From the NCBI RefSeq assembly GCF_001194135.2, contig NC_068996.1:54774969-54815523 (forward strand): a stretch of DNA of 40,555 bases, written 5' to 3'. This document shows positions 44-36,266 of this stretch, one piece after another. The notes below the pieces were generated by a model. It ran no database searches. It saw only the letters and a list, made by a program, of their open reading frames with translations, and was not told where the DNA came from. Each line of letters opens with the position of its first letter. The stretch's first letter is position 1. The position numbers and the translations under genes were made by a program. This stretch comes from Octopus bimaculoides (Eukaryota).

Positions 44-89
44 AAAACCGTTACTCTGAGTTTCATGTTCCCGTTCATCGGACAGTTTT
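44..89 (-). ncRNA. Minimal type I hammerhead ribozyme fold, core variant CCGAUGA
   Basis: Minus strand reads AAAACTGT-CCGATGA-ACG GGAA CAT-GAAAC-TCAGA-GTA-ACGGTTTT. Stem I has 8 bp (one G.U), stem II is short with one mismatch, stem III is near-palindromic ACTC(A)GAGT, and the site is GUA. Confidence 0.7.
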
Positions 90-316: not shown

Positions 317-487
317 TACCTACGTATGTTTGAGTGTATACACGTGTGGCATATGTAATATGTGTGTGTCTATATGCCTGTGTGCGTGTGTCTGTCTGTT
401 ATGTATGTATGCATGGGAGGGTCGAACATGCGCACGGCACCACGTTTTCAGTGTGTATTTTTACGGTCAGAGCTGTAGCTGACGAAA

Positions 488-914
488 ATGTCTCGAGATG
501 CTAAAGTTGAGCTGAAAAAACAAGTGACTTTACTGCAAGGGGTAGGTATAATCGTGGGTATTATAATAGGATCGGGAATATTTGTATCTCCCGTAGGCAT
601 TTTACAAAATGTGAGATCAGTTGGTCTTAGTCTATTAATGTGGGCAATATGCGGCTTGTACAACATGCTTTGTGCCCTGTGTTACGCAGAGTTAGGGGCT
701 TCGATACCTGAATCCGGGGGCGAATATGTCTATATTAAAAGAGCCTTCGGAGATTTTGCAGGATTCGTATGTCTTTGGATAAATTTTCTGCTAGTATGTC
801 CCGTTGGTATTGCTGCTGCTTCTCTAATATTTACAACGTATTTGCTGAAACCAATTTTCTCCGAATGTGACATACCTGAGAGCGGACTCCGCTTAATATC
901 AGCATTAATTGTCA
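488..914 (+). CDS. SLC7 light-chain (L-type/heteromeric) amino acid transporter, coding exon 1 (TM1-TM3 and start of TM4); exact paralog not assignable
   Basis: Translation has VELKKQVTLLQGVGIIVGIIIGSGIFVSP (TM1 GSG motif), CYAELG..IPESGGEYVYI..AFG and KPIFSEC (heavy-chain-linking Cys, codon 866-868). Donor GTAAGT at 915, phase 1. The ORF-track extension to 1093 is intron read-through. Confidence 0.95.
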
Positions 915-2459
915 GTAAGTATTGCATTATTCAATCAAAGCTATCAATTCAATTCTTCATTTGTTGTCCTCTTGTTTATATTTTGAATTGCCAACTTCGT
1001 ATCGTTCTCAATGTATTTTCCAATTTATGTTGCTCATGTGCACTTTTTGTTTTATGTAAATTATATATTTTAATGTTCGGTATTTATTCTTAATGTTTTT
1101 TTTTATGTTATTCTGTAGTTGTATTTAATCCTAAAATGTAATTATATGAACCTTATTTGCCCACATAATACTAATTAATATATTATGTATGAAATGTAAT
1201 CTCATAATGTAACCTCTTGGTGTTGTTGCATCATGCAATATAAGAAAATTTGAATTACAGTTAATACTTCAATAACGGTAAGTTCAGCACTTATACAAAG
1301 ATAAGAAAACTCGTTGCCGATAATAAATTGGGGTATTGAACAAATATTGAATCATACAAAACATGTCATATAAATACAAGCGTGACAGTCAAATTTTGTC
1401 TTTTGTTGTTGATTTTATTCGAAAATAAAATCTTGCCTATTTTAGGCATTTCGCATAAATTGCAGGTCGGTATTTTTTGAAAGAAAAATAGAGAAAAGAA
1501 GAAAAAAAAGGAAAATTATAAAAGTTGGGTAAATAACTTTGTAGCAGCTGTTGGGAAAATTATATTTCGCTTTGGGTTGTTTTTGCGCGCGTGTGTGTGT
1601 GTGTGTGTGTAGTAGTAGTAGTAGTTGTAAACGAATTAACCAACCTCGGTGCTTCGGTATTTTCATTCTATTTTGCATGTTTTTTCGTCTTTTTAAAAAG
1701 GCAAAAAACGTTGTTCATGTCGCAAGGAACAGTATTCAAAATTTCCCGTCCCATTGTCAAGCAGAAGGAGAGAGATACTTTCAACATTGTAGGTTAAAAT
1801 ATAAATAAAAAGGAAACAATGTTATAGTAATTCCGAAAGTGATACAGTTCACAGACTACTACTTTTACTAGTTTACCTATTTGATGTCCAGTTTGTCTCT
1901 TGTTTTCATTTATTCCGTCAATAGTTTGTTATATTCGTTGGGTTTTGTTTTGAAGTGTGAGATATAATTAAATCAAAAGTTTAAAATATGTGTTTGGATA
2001 TTTTTAGTTATCGAAAAAGAAACAACAGAAAATATGAACATCGAGTGCGGTGTGTTTATTTCTTACTACAATAATCCTTTTTAACTGGAAACACCCTTCG
2101 TGGTAACAGCTTTGTTTTAATCTCTTGCTTAACTTATTTAGAATTATAAAGACCTTATATCTTTATTATATTGAGTCCTTATATCTATCTTTGTTCACTG
2201 CAACATATACTTTATCTCCGCTCAAAGCAGCTTAAACACGTGTGCCTGTATTTTACAAAAGTCGTTGTTTATTTTGTATTTGCCTCATAATAGTTAATGA
2301 AACAGTTTTCTAAATTTTCAACATAGCAAAGAAACATCTAAAAAAAAAAAAATTGTCAGCCCGCCACGTGGTCCCAACAGACGAAATGGAAAAGGCATTG
2401 TCCCTGAGCATAACGAATGAGATTTATATGATATATCCATACATATGTATATATAAAAG

Positions 2460-20458: not shown

Positions 20459-23400
20459 GTGAGTAACCATGTGGCACATCTACAACATGAATTTGCTCTA
20501 CCCCATTCATTATCTTGTAGCTTCAAGATTTTAAAGATGTGATTGTTTATTTTTTGAATGACATTGTAGGGTAGGTGTGAGAGGCCAGGTATGGGCTGTT
20601 GGGCAGGTAATGGATGGTTTAAATGCTAGAATAAAGTGGTAACTCATAAATGCTGCACTGGTACAACTCTCATAGGACCTGAAGAACTAGAAGTAGAACA
20701 ATAAGTTGGAAGTTTATTAATGTTTTATTTTTGTATACAAAGCAAGACATCTGGACAAATTAAGGATGTTCACAATATTAGGAATACATTGTTCTTAGAG
20801 AACATGAAAATAACTGAAGATTTATGGAAGAGTTATTATTGTACTTTTTGTGTTGTGAATTGGCTTGGTCAGTTCTGCCCTTCATTTTCCTAAAATCAGT
20901 AAATTATCAGTGAATTAATGGGAGTTGATTTTGGCATTTGGAAGGGCATCGAGCCACAGAAACCATACCAAAACAGACAATAGATCTTGGCACAGCCCTC
21001 TGGCTTGTTAGCTTTTGTCAAACTCTCCAAATCATGCCTGTATAGAGAATGGACGTTAAATGATGATGGCCACAATGACAACAATGGCACTTACTACTCA
21101 AAATCAATGTGTTAGAATTGGAAATCATTTGTACATGTTATTTAACGCTGGGCCAGACGATAATGTGTCCTTTTTCTAGATAGTAAGACATGAGTTGAGA
21201 GAGATTTAACTGCTATTTCTAGCAGATCAAGCAACTGCTTATTGGCTCACTATAACAAGTTGTTGAAAAGTAAATATGAGTACAATAAGAGAAGTAGGTT
21301 GATTTTTCTCAGATTTTTAATACAGACAGGTGGAGTTAGTTTGTTGTAGCCGAGTGTCAGTACCCCATAGATTGTCCACAAAAAAGAAGTTGCAAACTTC
21401 TTTTTTGTGGATATTATACTATTTTGGTCAATGTATGCCATAAATGGCAGCAGACTAGGAATATTCTGAATTAACTGTGTTCTCTTCACTGAGAATCTAG
21501 TCGAGTTGACAGCTCATGTTGGTTGACCGCATGCCACATGGTCACAGCACATGAGGCAGTAACTTGTGGAGATGGCAACTGACTGGGACTCTGTTTGATG
21601 GGTCACCCTAGGGGGACCCAGGAAAATGGCAACAAATGGTGAATGCAGCAACATGCTTCAACAGCGCATTCTTTCACACATGATGTAACCTGTTTACTTA
21701 GATATGGTACCATTTCTGAAAAAGAAGTTATAGCAGAACATTTCAGATCCAGTACTTTGTAATAATTGTATTAATCTTACAAGATAATGTCCATTGATCA
21801 GAAGCCTTACTGGTAGGGCAGTCTGCAGGCACTGGACATCAGCAAGTGCATGAAGAAAAATTTCTTTCTTCTAATATATTTTTGACTTGTTTTGCTAAGA
21901 CGAATACTCAATAAATAATCAGTTCACAAGAATAATAACAAAGTTATGGAAACTTGATATGTGCACATAATTTAAGTTTATTGTAGTCATTGTGAATTGC
22001 TTCCAATGTGACAATAGCAGAGACAACTATTTCTTTAAATTTCATTGAGAGCAATGCTGTGCTAAATAAATGCCTATCATATCATTTGAAATATGTTTGT
22101 TACTGGGAGTTTGTACTCTAGCATGAAGCACACAGATTGGTTGATCTACTCTATAGACATCTTTTTGTATTTAGAACTCTCTTCTACAATTCTTTGGCTT
22201 CTTTTTCTTCTCTTTTTTCTCTTTTTTCTTCATTGACATCATTGTTGTTGTCTTCATCTTCTTCATCTTCGTCTTCTTTAAATCTCCACATGGATAGAAT
22301 CTATTTTGAAATGATGGTCAGAGAAACCAATAGCACTCAAAAATAGATTGATATAAAGATATCATTGATGTCATTGATATAAAGATATCATTGAGCCTGT
22401 GGGCATAATAATTACTTTAGTGATTTACTACTACCTGCCATTTTGCTGTTGTTTCTAATCAGAATATCCATTTACTATCAGCACTCAGTCAGTGCACTAC
22501 TTTTGCTGCCCATAGGTATGTATCACATTACTGAAATACCTCCATTTTGAATTATATAAAGAATTGTCAGACTTCTTTACTCCAATTGCAATAAATGTGT
22601 TCTGGAATTAAATACGAGTGTCTTTATTTTGATTAGGAATCAATGAAGAAAAGTTTATGGGTGTTGTGTCTGGTCACCAAGTGGAGGAATGCTATTTACT
22701 TAGATATATTCCTGATTAACCAATTAACAACTGAAGGGTTCGGTTAGAGTCTGAGTTCCGCATGAACTGAAATTAAATTAAATCATTGAAAAGAATTATA
22801 ATAAAGCACGGTAAAGGACCATTTCCTAATCTCTTTAAAGCAGGATAAAGGACCTTTCTTTCACCTCTTTGACTTATTTCTCCTTTGCAGCCTTATGACT
22901 GAATATGCAGGCTTCTAAGATATCCTTCAAAAAAACATTTCTTGTGGATAAACACTTCCAGGTCCTTTAAGTCTACCAAAATTTCTATACACTTTTCAGC
23001 AAGAAATGCTGTTCAAAATGTTGCATAAATGTGTTCACTTAAGAACATATTATATAATTTTTTAATACAAAATCTTTGGTAAAGTGTAATGCAATCAAAA
23101 TATGAAATAAACCATAAAAAGTGTCAAAATGAATGCATACAACAAACAAGACATCTTAAATCTTAATAACATCTTACCTTAATATTTACTTTTTGTATAT
23201 ATATCTGATGATTAGACATCTTATGAAATAATATGAAAAATTCTGAAGATATTTAACATTATCTGGGAAAGTTGAAATTATATACTTTATTACTACAGCA
23301 GAAATTATGGAATTTCAGTTTATTTGGTAACACTGATAAATCAAATTATTTGGCCAATCATATATTTTCACTTTTAAAACACTGCTAGAAAAAGTAGATT

Positions 23401-29472: not shown

Positions 29473-30687
29473 ATATATATATATATATAACATCAGTTTA
29501 ATGTCTGCTTTTCTATACTTGCATAAGTCAGACAGGGTTCATTAAGGTAGATTTTTAACAGCCAGGTACCTTTCCATTTGTTGTCAGCCCTTACTTGTTC
29601 TGAAGCAAGGTAATATTTTGTCATGACCAGACATATTTCCATAGAAGCTTGAAAGCAAGTAGCACGACTTGTGTGACAGTGACATTTGTTTACAACCAGT
29701 TTGTAAAGACAAGATAGGGAGGCACAAAGACACATACACACATGTTCATATGATGGGTTTCTTTCATTTTCTGTCTACCAAATACACTCACAAGGCCTTG
29801 TTTGATCTGGTACTAAAATGAATAACATTTGTCCAAGGGCCATATGAGACAATCTGAAAGCTCATGGTTGAGAAGCGAACCTCCTTGCGCCTAATTTACA
29901 GCTCTGCAGGCATGCATATATATATATATATATATATATATANNNNNNNNNNNNNNNNNNNNNNNNNNNNNNNNNNNNNNNNNNNNNNNNNNNNNNNNNN
30001 NNNNNNNNNNNNNNNNNNNNNNNNNNNNNNNNNNNNNNNNNNNNNNNNNNNNNNNNNNNNNNNNNNNNNNNNNNNNNNNNNNNNNNNNNNNNNNNNNNNN
30101 NNNNNNNNNNNNNNNNNNNNNNNNNNNNNNNNNNNNNNNNNNNNNNNNNNNNNNNNNNNNNNNNNNNNNNNNNNNNNNNNNNNNNNNNNNNNNNNNNNNN
30201 NNNNNNNNNNNNNNNNNNNNNNNNNNNNNNNNNNNNNNNNNNNNNNNNNNNNNNNNNNNNNNNNNNNNNNNNNNNNNNNNNNNNNNNNNNNNNNNNNNNN
30301 NNNNNNNNNNNNNNNNNNNNNNNNNNNNNNNNNNNNNNNNNNTTATAGGTGGAAACAGCACGAAAGTATGTTTGAAGGTTATTTTAAATTTTTTACATTA
30401 AGTGACTTATAAAATATTACTGCTTTCGAAGTTAATGTCCATCTTATCAAATATTAAGAATTAAAAGTCAAAAATTAAAGAAGGAGAAAAAATTGGAAAT
30501 TAAAACATTGTGTTCTCATATTTTGAACATAGTTAAATATATACATATACATATACTTAAATGGTTGTTGGCTATGGCCAGACAAGAGTGACCATTGGTT
30601 CTTAGCAGTATAGGTGACTCATCAACTAGAGTAATTTTTTGTTCATCTTGTCAACAAGCAAACAGTATACTATACGTATGTACATAC

Positions 30688-31140
30688 ATCGTCATCATTT
30701 AGCATCTGCTTTCCATGCTGACATGGGTTAAATAGCTTGATTGGAACTGGTAAGCCTGCAAGCTGTACCAAGTTGCAGTCTGAATTGGCATGGTCTTTAT
30801 GGCTGAATGCCCTTTCTAATGCCAACTACTCCAAGATTGTAGTGGATGCCTTTTACATGTCACCAGCCACAACTACAATTTCTCTTGGCTTGACAGGTCT
30901 TCTGAAGCACAGCATATTGCCAAAGGTCTTGGTCATTTGTCATCACTTGTGTGAGGCCCAACATTCAAAGATTGTACTTCATCACTTTGTCCCACATCTT
31001 CTTCGTTCAACCCCTTCCACAAATTCCCTCCACAGTTAGAGATCAGCACTTCTTCACACAGCTGTCCTCATCCATATGCATCACATGACCATGCCAGCAC
31101 AGTCACCTCCCTTGCATGCACCTGATGCCCCTTATACCCT
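30688..31140 (-). mobile_element. RTE-type LINE 3' end (ORF C-terminus joined to tail)
   Basis: Minus translation LCWHGHVMHMDEDSCVKKC..VEGICGRG...MTNDQDLW is directly followed by the tail-family sequence ending in gatgacgatg. Confidence 0.8.
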
Positions 31141-31466: not shown

Positions 31467-31630
31467 AGCACCCACTACACTCTCAGAGTGGTTGGCATTA
31501 GGAAGGGCATCCAGCTGTAGAAACTCTGCCAAATCAGATTGGAGCCTGGTGCAGCCTTCTGGTTCACCAGTCCTCATCAAATACTCCAACCCATGCTAGC
31601 ATGGAAAGCGGACGTTAAACGATAATGATA
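31467..31630 (+). mobile_element. RTE-type tail repeat (short, young-looking)
   Basis: agcacccactacactctcagagtggttggcattaggaagggcatccagctgtag...gcggacgttaaacgataatgat. Confidence 0.85.
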
Positions 31631-32299
31631 TATTTGAAATAAGAAAAAGAATGACTTCACTGGTAGATCTAGTAAGTCCTTTGTTAACTTGGGTGTGGAG
31701 ATTTTTTTTTTAATTCTCTGTTAACTTTTTTGGAGAACTTTCTCACTTTCATTGTCAAACAGATCTGAGGATTTGGAGCTTTGTGATTCTATATATGGGA
31801 TTTGGGTGTGTTTGCGGTGGGGCTGGAGGTTTGTTAATCAGTGTGAAAGTAAAAGTTATGAATGGTCAACACAAGATACTTGATTCGGGGTGGAATTGGG
31901 AGGTGGTGGGGTGTTAAAGGAGTGTTTTATGAAGCCATTCGAATAGTTGAACTTTGGTCAGAAATCTAATGACCAGATATTTTTTCCAAATTCTTTGTTT
32001 TAGTAATTTGCTGTTTTAGGTGTGTCTGGAGACAGGTGGTGTTAATGAGGTGTAAGATACATGTTTGATGAAAAATGTTTGTTGATAGAAGTGTTTTTTT
32101 ATATATATATTTTGGTTGGGGGGAGATCATGCTAGCTCAGAAAGGATATATACATCTCTCTCTCTCTCTCTCTCTGTGGTGCTCCAGCATGACCATGGTC
32201 GCATGGCTGAAATGAGTAAAAGAGTATATGCATACATACACTTATACATACACAAAGAAAACACACATATATATAAATAAATAACTACACATATATCTG

Positions 32300-32872: not shown

Positions 32873-33879
32873 NNNNNNNNNNNNNNNNNNNNNNNNNNNN
32901 NNNNNNNNNNNNNNNNNNNNNNNNNNNNNNNNNNNNNNNNNNNNNNNNNNNNNNNNNNNNNNNNNNNNNNNNNNNNNNNNNNNNNNNNNNNNNNNNNNNN
33001 NNNNNNNNNNNNNNNNNNNNNNNNNNNNNNNNNNNNNNNNNNNNNNNNNNNNNNNNNNNNNNNNNNNNNNNNNNNNNNNNNNNNNNNNNNNNNNNNNNNN
33101 NNNNNNNNNNNNNNNNNNNNNNNNNNNNNNNNNNNNNNNNNNNNNNNNNNNNNNNNNNNNNNNNNNNNNNNNNNNNNNNNNNNNNNNNNNNNNNNNNNNN
33201 NNNNNNNNNNNNNNNNNNNNNNNNNNNNNNNNNNNNNNNNNNNNNNNNNNNNNNNNNNNNNNNNNNNNNNNNNNNNNNNNNNNNNNNNNNNNNNNNNNNN
33301 NNNNNNNNNNNNNNNNNNNNNNNNNNNNNNNNNNNNNNNNNNNNNNNNNNNNNNNNNNNNNNNNNNNNNNNNNNNNNNNNNNNNNNNNNNNNNNNNNNNN
33401 NNNNNNNNNNNNNNNNNNNNNNNNNNNNNNNNNNNNNNNNNNNNNNNNNNNNNNNNNNNNNNNNNNNNNNNNNNNNNNNNNNNNNNNNNNNNNNNNNNNN
33501 NNNNNNNNNNNNNNNNNNNNNNNNNNNATGTGTGTGTGGGATTGTGATGTGTGTGGGGTTGTGAGTGTTAGGTACGGGTGCGTGTGTGTGTATGTGCATG
33601 TGTGTTTATGTGTGTGTCCGTGTGCGCGTGTGTGTATATATATATATATATTACGGAGATGTACTTGCATAGCAAGTGACCTGATCTGAGATCGTGTGCT
33701 GAAACGAAAACAATTGCAGTGTAGGAGTTTATAAGCTATTTAAGAAACACACAAAAACCCTTAGATTCAGGATTTCGAGGCATTCAGTTAGGCAAAGATC
33801 ACAACGCCTGTTAATTGAGTTCAACAATACACCAACACAGAGACCCCTTACAATTTATGTAGCTGTAAGGATAGGAATA

Positions 33880-34270
33880 AATGCAACTTCACCAATAGAT
33901 GTAAGATCGAAAATGTAGTTTACCAATGTGTCGTACACACAAACAGCCATATAAGATCATACATTGGGAACACGAAAACCAAATACGTTTCAGATACAAT
34001 GAACACCAATCTAGCTTTAGAAATAGAAAAAAGGCAAATTCAACAGGACTTAGTAGCTATATCTGGGAATTAAAGGACAATAATATAGCATACAAACTAA
34101 AATGGCATATACTCAGAACAGCAAATTCTTATAACTCAACAGGCATTGTGATCTTTGCCTCACTGATCGCCTCGAAATCCTAATGGCTACAACACATCTT
34201 CTAAACAAAAAATACATAAATAACCTAGTTTGTCTACACACTACAAAATTTTTATTTTCTAAGTATAATT
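33880..34270 (+). pseudogene. Penelope-like element GIY-YIG C-terminus (second family)
   Basis: CKIENVVYQCVVHTNSHIRSYIGNT, frameshift, FRYNEHQSSFRNRKKANSTGLSSYIWELKDNNIAYKLKWHIL, frameshift, HCDLCLTDRLEILM..LLNKK. Confidence 0.85.
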
Positions 34271-34607
34271 AAATATTTACTAGGACAGAGTTAGCTCCCT
34301 CTTCACCAGAACTTAAAGTTACTCCCCTTTACTTACACCGCCAGTACCATAAAACCATAACATCCACTTGATTTAACAACATCCACGTGCGGAATGCGCT
34401 TGACTAAGATTGGAATTACGGACTTAAACAGCACCCACCCTACCTCTCCTTCCCAGAAATATTATTAACCCTGATTTCGACTAAAATGTGAGACTCACTA
34501 TACCTTACCTCTATTTTCACACCACTATATGCATTCTTTTACATTAGTATATCCTCAACCTTTTGATACCTTCATCTCTCACACCATGCATCTAAACAGA
34601 CTTCTCA

Positions 34608-34661
34608 GCATTCTGAAGAGATCTGCCAATTAAATTGGCAAATCGAAACGATCGTAAATGT
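34608..34661 (+). ncRNA. Minimal type I hammerhead ribozyme, canonical core, in the 3' UTR/pLTR of the Penelope remnant
   Basis: GCATT-CTGAAGA-GATCTGCCAAT TAA ATTGGCAAATC-GAAAC-GATC-GTA^AATGT. Stem I 5 bp (one G.U), stem II 10 bp plus one mismatch, palindromic stem III ACGATCGT; predicted cleavage after 34656. Confidence 0.88.
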
Positions 34662-34747
34662 AACATTACATAATCTCCACATAATTGATTAAATTCATGG
34701 CTAATCAACCTGCTTCTTCCTGTGTTTGTTTCTCCATTCTCTACATG

Positions 34748-34809
<62 letters not shown>

Positions 34810-34810
34810 C

Positions 34811-34841
<31 letters not shown>

Positions 34842-34988
34842 CATATTTTGTATTTGATGTGTCTGATTTGTTTATGTACATAATTGCCCCCCTCTCTCTC
34901 TCTCTCGTTATATTTTTAAATATACATACATATATCATCATCATCATCGTTTAACGTCCGCTTTCCAAACATATATATATATATATAT

Positions 34989-35044
<56 letters not shown>

Positions 35045-35669
35045 ACACACACATATATATTGTATAGAGGGTAAGGCCAGAACAACGCAAAGTAAATGCA
35101 AGGCAAATCCAAAGAAAACAAATATATGAATTAATGTAGACTTGCCTTGCAGTCAATATTTCTGGGTTATAACCCCATTTTCAAGAAACTGATGGATGTT
35201 ACCAATGAGCGTGTGTGGAGTGGTCATGCACGGAAAGGTGTTGCTATAGCAACCAGCTAGCTTCCTGTAACTCTCTTCTGTTGTTGATCTTAGGTNNNNN
35301 NNNNNCCTGTAACTCTCTTCTGTTGTTGATCTTAGGTTTCTTTTGGTGTATGAGGATGGCCTCAGAGATTCTAAGGTTGCCCCTGTTCTGCCATGTTGAC
35401 CTGATGTGCTCTGTGAATTCCCAGGTCTGCCATTTGCGTAGATGTTTATTCACAGAAGTGTCTGCCTGTGTTCCTTTATACGTATATGCAGTTTTCTCCT
35501 GGTGCTTCCTATGTAGGATGCACCACATTTGCCACAGATGATCTCGTATACAACATAGGTCCTCTGGCACAATTCAGGGTTATTGAAGGGGTTAGCAGAT
35601 TTCAACATCTCATCATAAAATTGTCCTGCTAAGTCTTAAAATAGATTTTTGTTTACAAAAGCTTATTAA

Positions 35670-35962: not shown

Positions 35963-36037
35963 TACCTTGGTTTTTGAGATAACATTCTATGATGTTGTTT
36001 TCTTTCCTAATATTTTCCCACATTTTCTTTTTGACAG

Positions 36038-36163
36038 TGCTCCTTATTATGCTGAACTGCATAAATGTGAAATTAGTTACAAGGTTGCAACTTATCATCA
36101 CATTCAGCAAGATCATAGCTCTGTTAATCATAATCTTCATTGGATTTTATTGGATTGGCACTG
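36038..36163 (+). CDS. SLC7 transporter coding exon 2 (TM4-TM5)
   Basis: Polypyrimidine tract and acceptor ttttctttttgacAG (36036-36037). Phase 1 join A|TG gives ...ALIVMLLIMLNCINVKLVTRLQLIITFSKIIALLIIIFIG. Donor GTAATG at 36164; 126 nt, phase 1-1. Confidence 0.93.
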
Positions 36164-36266
36164 GTAATGTTATTTCTTTTTTTCTTTGACTGTTACAATT
36201 TATTACAACTGATTAGACAATATTCCTGAATTTTTTTTTTTTTTTCTGTTAAACATAAGAGTTTGA

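What the first reader, a model, noticed from the sequence alone, without database searches (positions are those of the whole stretch)
34608..34661. Apparently intact hammerhead ribozyme in the sense strand of the SLC7 intron, 1.4 kb upstream of exon 2
Seen: every conserved core base (CUGAAGA, GAAA, GUA site), three helices and a palindromic stem III (ACGAUCGU), ~350 nt after a Penelope GIY-YIG remnant on the same strand. Established: Penelope-like elements carry minimal type I hammerheads with palindromic stem III that cleave best as dimers. Inference: this copy is transcribed in every host pre-mRNA. It could cut intron 1 co-transcriptionally and influence splicing of a 35-kb intron, or be silent because it has no partner. 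The core is unmutated although the adjacent ORF is frameshifted.
Basis: partly seen in the sequence, partly recalled or inferred. Interest (0 to 1): 0.7.

Follow-up and report, generated by a model that had tools for sequence, protein, structure and literature searches.

The report
Relic retrotransposon hammerhead ribozyme in intron
The sequence really is a complete hammerhead ribozyme motif, but it is the ordinary 3'-end signature of a broken Penelope-like retrotransposon (Hydra clade) that landed in a (TA)n microsatellite inside an amino-acid-transporter intron, and as a lone copy it is predicted to be essentially inactive.

Summary
Observation confirmed. Window 34608-34661 (+) carries every hammerhead core base (CUGAAGA, GAAA, A15.1-U16.1, GUA), a 5-bp helix I, a 9/10-bp helix II and a palindromic helix III (ACGAUCGU). 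A motif of this quality appeared in 0.2% of shuffled windows. A covariance model built only from relatives finds it (16.8 bits, E about 0.016). It lies 354 nt downstream of a twice-frameshifted endonuclease remnant on the same strand. That remnant belongs to the Hydra clade of Penelope-like elements (CxCx5C linker, CDLC...CLH, (TA)n target), not Penelope proper. In 85 related loci, 67 carry a hammerhead on the coding strand, with abundant compensatory changes. Full-length relatives carry one on each side of the ORF. The host context is also right: sense strand of intron 1 (915-36037) of an SLC7-type gene, 1381 nt upstream of exon 2. The functional idea is not supported. There is no partner copy in 40 kb. 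The monomer fold is disfavoured (helix I probability about 0 in context). Published lone copies of this type do not cleave detectably. An intact core is expected by chance in a lightly decayed copy. Verdict: an ordinary transposon relic and a new member of a known kind. Conservation in other species could not be tested.

The parts
34608..34661 (+). Complete type I hammerhead ribozyme motif. Helix I is 34608-34612/34657-34661. The core CUGAAGA is 34613-34619. Helix II hairpin is 34620-34644. GAAA is 34645-34648. The palindromic helix III ACGAUCGU is 34648-34655. The predicted cleavage site is 34656/34657.
   Evidence: Sequence read. Descriptor scans. Rfam RF00163 full-length alignment at 12.1 bits. 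Family covariance model R1 at 16.8 bits, E 0.016.
33831..34254 (+). Remnant of the C-terminal endonuclease of a Hydra-clade Penelope-like element, read in three frames (33831-33986, 33974-34141, 34141-34254; two frameshifts, no stop). Motifs present: CSCKDRNKC (CxCx5C, from 33858), NVVYQC...YIGNT, RYNEH, CDLCLTD..LEIL, LLNKK, CLH.
   Evidence: Translation. The profile search returned 70 relatives. tblastn of the full-length relatives L009/L027 places it at residues about 551-698 of 702-704. The motifs match the clade description in PMC8557442 section 11.
34255..34749 (+). 3' untranslated tail of the element (the pLTR-equivalent region). It contains the hammerhead and ends at the (TA)n junction.
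   Evidence: Sequence. In relatives the hammerhead starts 54-535 nt (median 196) after the endonuclease match; here the distance is 354 nt.
33765..33812 (-). Inverted fragment of the same endonuclease (it encodes NRRCDLCLTECLEIL), 91% identical to 34138-34181. It lies within the 33656-33825 segment between the 5' microsatellite and the direct copy.
   Evidence: blastn self-hit. Local alignment and translation. Inverted 5'-truncated copies next to PLE insertions are described in PMC8557442.
33570..33655 (.). (TG)n/(TA)n microsatellite flanking the insertion on the 5' side. The assembly gap 32873-33527 lies just upstream.
34750..34845 (.). (TA)n/(TACA)n microsatellite flanking the insertion on the 3' side, the preferred target of Hydra-clade PLEs.
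   Evidence: PMC8557442 section 11.
488..914 (+). First coding exon of the host SLC7/LAT-type amino-acid transporter gene (ATG at 488; GTAAGT donor at 915).
   Evidence: Pfam AA_permease_2 at 1.7e-16. Sequence. Homologues are named Y+L / large neutral amino acid transporters.
36038..36163 (+). Next coding exon (AG acceptor at 36036-36037, GT donor at 36164). The reading frame continues from exon 1 in phase 1. The intron between them is 915-36037.
   Evidence: Sequence. Weak AA_permease_2 match to profile positions 121-170, contiguous with the exon 1 match to positions 3-134.

Best explanation
This is the 3'-terminal hammerhead of a dead, 5'-truncated Hydra-clade Penelope-like retrotransposon. 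The element inserted into a (TA)n microsatellite in intron 1 of an SLC7-type gene.

In the living element the hammerhead sits in the repeats on both sides of the single RT-endonuclease ORF. There, two copies pair through their palindromic helix III to form an active dimer, which is thought to process the element's tandem transcript. That last step is taken from the literature, not shown here.

This copy has lost the 5' part of the element and therefore its partner. It is carried passively in the host pre-mRNA. It folds mainly into the stable helix II hairpin plus competing local pairings, and is expected to cleave at a negligible rate. It has no host function.

Shown here: the motif, the element type, the family-wide association, the host context, the absence of a partner in the window, and the unfavourable monomer fold. 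Inferred: inactivity in vivo and absence of a host role.
For: 1. Motif and statistics.

2. Element type. The remnant has the CxCx5C linker, GIY/YIG, CDLC...E...N...CLH motifs. It is flanked by (TA)n on both sides. This matches the published definition of the Hydra clade, in which canonical hammerheads were 'readily detected' (PMC8557442 section 11). Full-length relatives L009 and L027 have one 702-704-aa ORF with RWK, DKT and YRDDG motifs and the same endonuclease. Each has two identical hammerheads about 2.4 kb apart bracketing the ORF.

3. Family-wide association. A relaxed descriptor finds 54 hits on the coding strand against 5 on the other strand in 85 related loci, with 0.55 expected by shuffling. 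Hits occur downstream of the endonuclease in 39 of the 58 loci that have at least 300 nt of downstream sequence. The covariance model finds a coding-strand hit in 67 of the 85 loci. All 6 helix I pairs and all 4 helix II pairs show changes on both sides. The two inner helix III pairs, which the descriptor did not require, are paired in 42/44 and 38/44 sequences with 5-6 pair types each.

4. No partner. ACGATCGT occurs once in the window. No other intact family hammerhead lies on the + strand.

5. Folding. With 8 or more nt of native flank, helix I pair probability is 0.004 or less and helix III about 0.02. The hammerhead-enforced fold is 4-8 kcal/mol worse than the MFE. Upstream UUCUCAG pairs with the CUGAAGA core. 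Two copies co-fold through an 8-bp intermolecular helix III (-32.0 against 2 x -10.2 kcal/mol).

6. Literature. A single PLE min-hammerhead showed no detectable cleavage and dimers were slow; most genomic copies are lone motifs from truncated PLEs (PMC4209133; PMC6765202). About 44% of related hammerhead repeats in Xenopus lie in introns (bioRxiv 10.64898/2026.07.22.740005). A second decayed Hydra-type hammerhead lies at 47-86 (-) of this same window, so such relics are common here.
Against: 1. All core bases are intact and the helices are nearly perfect, so residual activity cannot be excluded by sequence alone.

2. Secondary-structure energies ignore tertiary contacts, proteins and co-transcriptional kinetics.

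3. Helix III of 2 bp plus a 4-nt loop is no weaker than in some natural hammerheads that do cleave slowly.

4. The assembly gap 32873-33527, about 130 nt upstream of the insertion, could hide sequence.

5. Neither orthologous conservation nor the divergence of this copy from its own genomic family could be measured. Selection on this copy is therefore not excluded, only unsupported.

6. The window hammerhead scores low against the family model (16.8 bits, against 17-60 for the matches listed in the related loci). It has an unusually long helix II, so it is a divergent member of the family.
Confidence: 0.85

Rival explanations
1. The relic still self-cleaves at a low but meaningful rate inside the SLC7 pre-mRNA. 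This could happen as a monomer helped by chaperones, or by pairing in trans with transcripts of other genomic copies. It would then modulate splicing or transcript yield, in the manner of the intronic CPEB3 ribozyme or the amniote intronic hammerheads HH9/HH10.
For: The core and all three helices are intact. The motif is on the sense strand of an intron, 1381 nt before the next exon. Precedent exists: intron cleavage by the CPEB3 ribozyme is tuned to co-transcriptional splicing and lowers CPEB3 expression (PMC10919898). Authors have proposed that host factors may raise PLE hammerhead activity in vivo (PMC4209133).
Against: No cis partner is present. The monomer fold is almost unpopulated in context. 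No loop-loop tertiary contact is apparent, because helix I is only 5 bp and open while helix II is 10 bp. Lone PLE hammerheads are inactive in vitro. Nothing indicates selection, since an intact core is expected in a copy with only two frameshifts. Lone intronic copies of this kind are common.
Confidence: 0.07
2. The motif is a chance match to a short, degenerate consensus and is unrelated to the neighbouring transposon remnant.
For: Rfam scores it far below threshold (12.1 against 34 bits). The bare box pattern CTGANGA...GAAA...TH is no more frequent than chance (4 found, 7.3 expected). Another hammerhead-like hit at 23200 (+) in AT-rich DNA is probably chance.
Against: A motif of the observed quality occurs in 0.2% of shuffles. 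It lies on the coding strand, 354 nt after a Hydra-clade endonuclease and about 90 nt before the (TA)n junction, which is exactly where 67 of 85 relatives carry theirs. An independent family model finds it. Rfam misses the genuine family members too.
Confidence: 0.02
3. The copy belongs to a still-mobile non-autonomous derivative (retrozyme-like). Its hammerhead would then serve element propagation from this locus, not being a dead relic.
For: Non-LTR retrozymes are proposed to be non-autonomous derivatives of PLE terminal repeats (bioRxiv 10.64898/2026.07.22.740005). The coding remnant is only lightly decayed.
Against: There is a single hammerhead, no tandem repeat and no second terminal repeat. 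The unit is a 5'-truncated coding fragment joined to an inverted scrap, which is typical of abortive PLE insertion. No other copy exists in the window.
Confidence: 0.04

Closest known systems
Hammerheads of Penelope-like elements (min-HHRs and small palindromic-helix-III variants; Cervera & de la Pena 2014, PMC4209133; Lunse et al. 2016, cited via PMC6765202)
   Same: Type I topology, short open helix I (5 bp), long helix II (10 bp), G10.1-C11.1, palindromic 15.2-16.2 positions and loop 3, a position in the terminal repeat region on the coding strand, and occurrence as a lone motif from a truncated element.
   Different: There is no unpaired nucleotide between A9 and 10.1, which is a frequent but not universal PLE trait. 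Helix II is longer than in most relatives (3-6 bp in the 44 aligned, against 9+1 here). Activity was not tested.
Hydra clade of C-terminal-endonuclease PLEs (Craig et al. 2021, PMC8557442)
   Same: CxCx5C linker, CxxC and CxH motifs around the conserved E and N, insertion into (TA)n, a canonical hammerhead near the 3' end, and presence in molluscs. Full-length relatives are under 3 kb and carry RWK and DKT motifs.
   Different: Only the last approximately 140 codons and the 3' tail survive here, so the RT motifs cannot be checked in this copy. The invariant E of the family's LTEK motif reads D (LTDR) here.
Dimer-dependent type I hammerheads of newt, schistosome and cricket satellite repeats and animal non-LTR retrozymes (PMC7229834; PMC6765202)
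   Same: A 2-bp helix III with a small palindromic loop, so that two tandem copies form the active double hammerhead.
   Different: Those occur in tandem arrays that supply the partner and have helix I / helix II loop contacts. This one is a solitary copy with no recognisable tertiary contact.
Conserved intronic ribozymes with a host role (amniote HH9/HH10, de la Pena & Garcia-Robles 2010, cited via PMC6765202; mammalian CPEB3 HDV-like ribozyme, PMC10919898)
   Same: Sense strand of an intron of a protein-coding gene, upstream of the next exon.
   Different: Those are conserved at orthologous positions across large clades and cleave as monomers. Here conservation is untested, a stable monomer fold is not predicted, and the motif is visibly part of a transposon remnant.

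Membership tests
Hammerhead ribozyme, type I | Conserved core C3 U4 G5 A6 N7 G8 A9, G12 A13 A14, A15.1-U16.1, H17 not G | tested here: met
   CUGAAGA is 34613-34619, GAAA is 34645-34648, U34655 and A34656 follow. Rfam RF00163 aligns all core columns.
Hammerhead ribozyme, type I | Three helices around the core, with helix I open and helices II and III closed | tested here: met
   Helix I is 5 bp, helix II is 9 pairs plus 1 mismatch, and helix III is 2 bp as a monomer or 8 bp as a dimer.
Hammerhead ribozyme, type I | Score at or above the Rfam RF00163 gathering threshold | tested here: not met
   12.1 bits against 34. The same search also reports nothing in 20 related PLE loci that contain hammerheads, so the threshold is not informative for this subtype.
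Hammerhead ribozyme, type I | Self-cleavage 3' of H17 | not testable with these tools
   This needs in vitro transcription or RNA end mapping.
Hammerhead ribozyme, type I | Thermodynamically accessible active fold / tertiary helix I-II contacts (extended, fast form) | tested here: not met
   Helix I pair probability is 0.004 or less and helix III about 0.02 in native context. The hammerhead-enforced fold is 4-8 kcal/mol above the MFE. No loop 1 or bulge is available to contact loop 2.
PLE-associated dimeric hammerhead | Located in the terminal repeat / 3' region of a PLE on the coding strand | tested here: met
   It lies 354 nt after the endonuclease remnant and about 90 nt before the (TA)n junction. 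The placement is the same in 67 of 85 relatives.
PLE-associated dimeric hammerhead | Short helix III with palindromic 15.2-16.2 positions and loop | tested here: met
   ACGAUCGU is a perfect palindrome. Co-folding gives an 8-bp intermolecular helix.
PLE-associated dimeric hammerhead | Extra nucleotide between A9 and 10.1 | tested here: not met
   G34620 pairs directly with C34644. Part of the relatives listed lack the bulge as well.
PLE-associated dimeric hammerhead | A second copy nearby to form the active dimer | tested here: not met
   There is one exact ACGATCGT in 40.5 kb. No other intact family hammerhead is on the + strand. The gap 32873-33527 is unread.
Hydra clade PLE | C-terminal GIY-YIG endonuclease with a CxCx5C linker | tested here: met
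   CSCKDRNKC starts at 33858, followed by NVVYQC...YIGNT.
Hydra clade PLE | CxxC and CxH motifs flanking the conserved E and N; no CCHH motif | tested here: met
   The remnant has CDLC, LEIL, LLNKK and CLH. In the 18-sequence family alignment the nearly invariant cysteines are those of the linker and of CxxC, and no internal CCHH is evident. Absence of CCHH was judged by eye only.
Hydra clade PLE | RT with RWK and DKT motifs; element under 3 kb | tested here: inconclusive
   The RT is missing from this truncated copy. Full-length relatives L009 and L027 have RWK, DKT and YRDDG motifs and a unit of about 2.4 kb. Pfam and PDB sequence searches recognise no RT in them.
Hydra clade PLE | Insertion into (TA)n | tested here: met
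   (TA)n lies at 33630-33655 and at 34750-34845.
Host-functional intronic ribozyme (HH9/HH10, CPEB3 type) | Conservation at the orthologous intronic position across species | not testable with these tools
   Only exon-1-proximal contigs of a related species could be fetched (L087-L091, 76-79% identity in the intron).

The most novel reading that the evidence does not exclude
This solitary Hydra-clade hammerhead has been co-opted. It would cleave the nascent SLC7 pre-mRNA slowly, helped by RNA chaperones or by transient pairing with transcripts of sister copies. That would set up a kinetic competition with splicing of a 35-kb intron and tune transporter expression. If so, it would be an invertebrate, transposon-derived analogue of the CPEB3 intronic ribozyme.
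Probability: 0.04. Interest if true: 0.6.

Novelty: new member of a known kind. Interest (0 to 1): 0.15.

Why it matters
As it stands it matters little. It is one more lone hammerhead left behind by a truncated Penelope-like element, a class already known to number in the thousands per genome in many animals and to lie often in introns.

Three modest by-products may be useful:
- It is a worked example that a probable cephalopod genome carries hammerhead-bearing Hydra-clade PLE relics. A second relic lies at 47-86 of the same window.
- Rfam's Hammerhead_1 threshold reported none of the hammerheads in the 20 related loci searched, so annotation pipelines will overlook the group.
- The 44-sequence alignment and covariance model, drawn from marine metagenome contigs, show rich covariation in all three helices.

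Only if cleavage in vivo were shown would it bear on the open question of whether intronic ribozymes regulate host genes outside vertebrates.

Tried and rejected
1. Rfam at gathering score on the window gave nothing. At E<=10 on 651 nt it gave only microsatellite artefacts such as mir-297. A weak RF00163 hit appeared only in an 81-nt search. Rfam also found nothing in 20 related loci, so I dropped it as a criterion.

2. The bare box pattern CTGANGA..GAAA..TH is not enriched, so helices had to be scored.

3. My first strict descriptor found almost no hammerheads in relatives. Reading the 3' tails by eye showed why: many have U.U at 10.1/11.1 and odd-length quasi-palindromic helix III. The relaxed descriptor then worked.

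4. Pfam did not recognise the + strand endonuclease remnant or the full-length relatives. A PDB sequence search gave nothing either. Clade assignment therefore rests on homology to the family and on the motifs published for the Hydra clade.

5. The first word-based protein search gave a single hit. A two-sequence profile gave 70.

6. The O. bimaculoides relative L002 is 83% identical over 122 nt of the endonuclease. Its hammerhead region is decayed and its 3' tail is unrelated, so it is no use as a consensus.

7. The conservation test failed for lack of data. The SLC7 exon search returned only exon-1-sized ORFs. A 72-kb contig at 81% amino-acid identity (L086) and five contigs of 1.2-2.0 kb from a closer species (L087-L091) do not reach the hammerhead region.

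8. Exact look-ups of two window ORFs to identify the source record found nothing.

9. I initially read + strand homology upstream to about 33715. I withdrew that reading after 33765-33812 proved to be an inverted endonuclease fragment.

A 7-sequence alignment worked.

11. Lunse et al. 2016 (PMC5785218) is not held in the library, so it is cited only through the review PMC6765202.

Full report
THE MOTIF

Window 34608-34661 (+) reads GCAUU CUGAAGA GAUCUGCCAAUUAAAUUGGCAAAUC GAAA CGAUCG UA AAUGU. Every invariant hammerhead position is present: C3-A9 at 34613-34619, G12-A14 and A15.1 at 34645-34648, U16.1 at 34655 and H17 = A at 34656.

- Helix I has 5 pairs (34608-12 with 34657-61).
- Helix II has 9 pairs and one C.A mismatch, closed by a 5-nt loop, and starts with the canonical G10.1-C11.1.
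- Helix III as a hairpin is only two pairs around a GAUC loop. The 8-mer ACGAUCGU is self-complementary.
- The predicted scissile bond is 34656/34657.

IS IT MORE THAN CHANCE?

The naked box pattern is not enriched (4 found, 7.3 expected). Once helices are required, a motif of the observed quality appears in only 0.2% of 1000 dinucleotide shuffles of the whole window on both strands; a loose descriptor appears in 7.3%. With the relaxed family descriptor, no shuffle in 300 gave helix I >=5, helix II >=6 and a helix III insert >=4.

Rfam does not report the motif at gathering score. In an 81-nt search, Hammerhead_1 aligns end to end at 12.1 bits against a threshold of 34. That failure is uninformative, because the same Rfam search reports nothing in 20 related transposon loci that demonstrably carry hammerheads.

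A covariance model (R1) built from 44 relatives, with the window excluded, recovers 34608-34661 at 16.8 bits, E about 0.016 for the whole window. This is a real but divergent match: the 74 matches listed (E up to 0.1) in the related loci score 17-60 bits. The main difference is the long helix II.

WHAT IT BELONGS TO

On the same strand, 33831-34254 encodes the C-terminal endonuclease of a retroelement. It is read in three frames, with two frameshifts and no stop. It carries the following motifs in order: CSCKDRNKC, NVVYQC...YIGNT, RYNEH, CDLCLTD..LEIL, LLNKK and CLH.

Pfam does not recognise it. A profile search found 70 relatives, and a scan of metagenome contigs found 80 loci. Two of these, L009 and L027, are complete. 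Each has one 702-704-aa ORF with RWK, DKT and YRDDG motifs followed by the same endonuclease, bracketed by two identical hammerheads about 2.4 kb apart.

These features are the published definition of the Hydra clade of Penelope-like elements: RWK, DKG changed to DKT, a CxCx5C linker, CxxC and CxH around the conserved E and N, no CCHH, length under 3 kb, (TA)n targets, and canonical hammerheads readily detected (PMC8557442 section 11). The window copy is flanked by (TA)n on both sides (33630-33655 and 34750-34845).

A short inverted scrap of the same endonuclease (33765-33812, minus strand, encoding NRRCDLCLTECLEIL) precedes the direct copy. That is the composite inverted-plus-truncated layout described for PLE insertions. 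No reverse-transcriptase part and no 5' repeat are present.

THE HAMMERHEAD IS A CONSTANT PART OF THIS ELEMENT FAMILY

In the 85 related loci a relaxed descriptor gives 54 hits on the coding strand and 5 on the other, against 0.55 expected from shuffles. Of 58 loci with at least 300 nt downstream of the endonuclease, 39 have a hammerhead there, 54-535 nt (median 196) after the match. The window's distance is 354 nt. The covariance model raises this to 67 of 85 loci with a coding-strand hit, including many sequences not used to build it.

The 44-sequence alignment shows changes on both sides in all six helix I pairs and all four helix II pairs. The two inner helix III pairs were not demanded by the descriptor, yet they are paired in 42/44 and 38/44 sequences with five to six pair types each. 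Part of the pairing in helices I and II is circular, because the descriptor required it. The diversity of pair types and the helix III result are not circular.

HOST CONTEXT

- ORF 488-1093 matches AA_permease_2 at 1.7e-16. Its relatives are named Y+L or large neutral amino-acid transporters.
- A consensus GTAAGT donor follows at 915.
- An AG acceptor at 36036-37 opens a 126-nt exon (36038-36163). This exon continues the reading frame in phase 1 and continues the permease profile.

The hammerhead therefore lies on the sense strand of a nominal 35.1-kb intron (915-36037; several assembly gaps make the length approximate), 1381 nt before the next exon. The organism is not given. The nearest named transposon relative is on an Octopus bimaculoides chromosome, and the transporter's named relatives are molluscan.

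WILL IT CUT?

Three lines of evidence say hardly at all.

1. No partner. ACGATCGT occurs once in 40.5 kb. The only other family-model hits are two. One is a decayed antisense relic at 47-86 with U4 changed to C. The other is an AT-rich hit at 23200 that lacks helix III and is probably chance.

2. The monomer fold is disfavoured. With native flanks, helix I pairing probability falls to 0.004 or below and helix III stays near 0.02, while the helix II hairpin is always formed. Enforcing the hammerhead costs 4-8 kcal/mol relative to the MFE. The upstream UUCUCAG pairs with the CUGAAGA core before the 3' strand of helix I is even transcribed. Two copies, by contrast, co-fold through an 8-bp intermolecular helix III (-32.0 against 2 x -10.2 kcal/mol). 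This agrees with the dimer mechanism.

3. Experiment in the literature. A single PLE min-hammerhead gave no detectable cleavage, dimers and trimers cleaved poorly, and most genomic copies are lone motifs from truncated elements (PMC4209133; review PMC6765202).

From general knowledge (not computed here), RNA polymerase II needs only some tens of seconds to travel 1.4 kb. Only a fast monomeric ribozyme could therefore compete with definition of the downstream exon, as proposed for CPEB3 (PMC10919898).

IS THE INTACT CORE A SIGN OF SELECTION?

No such inference is warranted. The coding remnant shows two frameshifts and no stop in about 141 codons, which indicates light decay. At 5-10% divergence, the chance that about 11 invariant bases all escape mutation is roughly 30-60% (my estimate, not a measured divergence).

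The decisive comparisons could not be run. These are the divergence of the hammerhead against its flanks and against other genomic copies, and its presence at the orthologous site in other species. The accessible collections gave only exon-1-proximal contigs of related species and one unrelated-subfamily copy from O. bimaculoides.

VERDICT

The structural interpretation is right apart from the clade name. The proposed host function is unsupported and unlikely.

This is a new member of a known kind: a solitary hammerhead relic of a 5'-truncated Hydra-clade Penelope-like element in an intron. Lone intronic copies of such repeats are common; for example, about 44% of Xenopus non-LTR retrozyme copies overlap introns. 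Interest is low. The residual novel reading, slow regulatory cleavage of the transporter pre-mRNA, has a probability of a few per cent.

Noticed in passing
window 47-86 (-): A second Hydra-type hammerhead relic: ACUGU CCGAUGA ACGGGAACAU GAAA CUCAGAG UA ACGGU. It scores higher against the family model (23 bits, E 2e-4) than the finding itself, but has a core U4-to-C change and a decayed helix II. It is a roughly 60-nt 3'-end fragment abutting a (TA/TACA)n tract, antisense to the SLC7 gene and about 400 nt upstream of its ATG.
   Followed up: partly
window 23200-23235 (+): A minimal hammerhead-like motif with no helix III insert (UAUAU CUGAUGA ... GAAA UA AUAUG), at 18.3 bits with model R1. It sits in AT-rich DNA with weak A/U helices. 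The relaxed descriptor gives 0.16 chance hits per shuffled window, so this is probably chance.
   Followed up: partly
window 35260-35608 (-): An unrelated, canonical-type PLE GIY-YIG endonuclease remnant on the opposite strand (VVYEIICGKCGASYIGSTRRKL..EH, Pfam PF01541 at 5e-5). It is frameshifted, and no hammerhead was found downstream of it.
   Followed up: partly
window 35264-35295 and 35306-35337: A 32-nt exact duplicate lies on both sides of the 10-N gap at 35296-35305. This looks like an assembly or scaffolding artefact.
   Followed up: no
window 33765-33812 (-): An inverted fragment of the same Hydra-clade endonuclease, 91% identical to 34138-34181. It makes the insertion an inverted-plus-direct composite.
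   Followed up: yes
loci L006-L085 (20 of them searched): Rfam 15 at gathering score reports no hammerhead in 20 loci that each contain a clear PLE hammerhead. This subtype is invisible to standard Rfam annotation.
   Followed up: yes
L009 36-80 and 2433-2477; L027 241-287 and 2628-2674: These are complete Hydra-clade elements in marine metagenome contigs. Identical hammerheads bracket a 702-704-aa ORF, giving a unit of about 2.4 kb. Pfam recognises neither the RT nor the GIY-YIG domain in these proteins.
   Followed up: partly
window 30684-30849 and 31468-31633: A 166-nt inverted repeat, 75% complementary, with arms 618 nt apart. It may be another mobile-element remnant.
   Followed up: no
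window 34741-34880: The sub-threshold Rfam 'mir-297', 'mir-3149' and RUF21 matches here are low-complexity (TA)n/(TACA)n artefacts.
   Followed up: yes
L087-L091 against window 475-2150: Logan contigs from runs SRR11869384-94 carry the orthologous exon 1 (96% amino-acid identity) and adjacent intron at 76-79% DNA identity. A related species therefore exists in public reads and could serve for the conservation test.
   Followed up: partly
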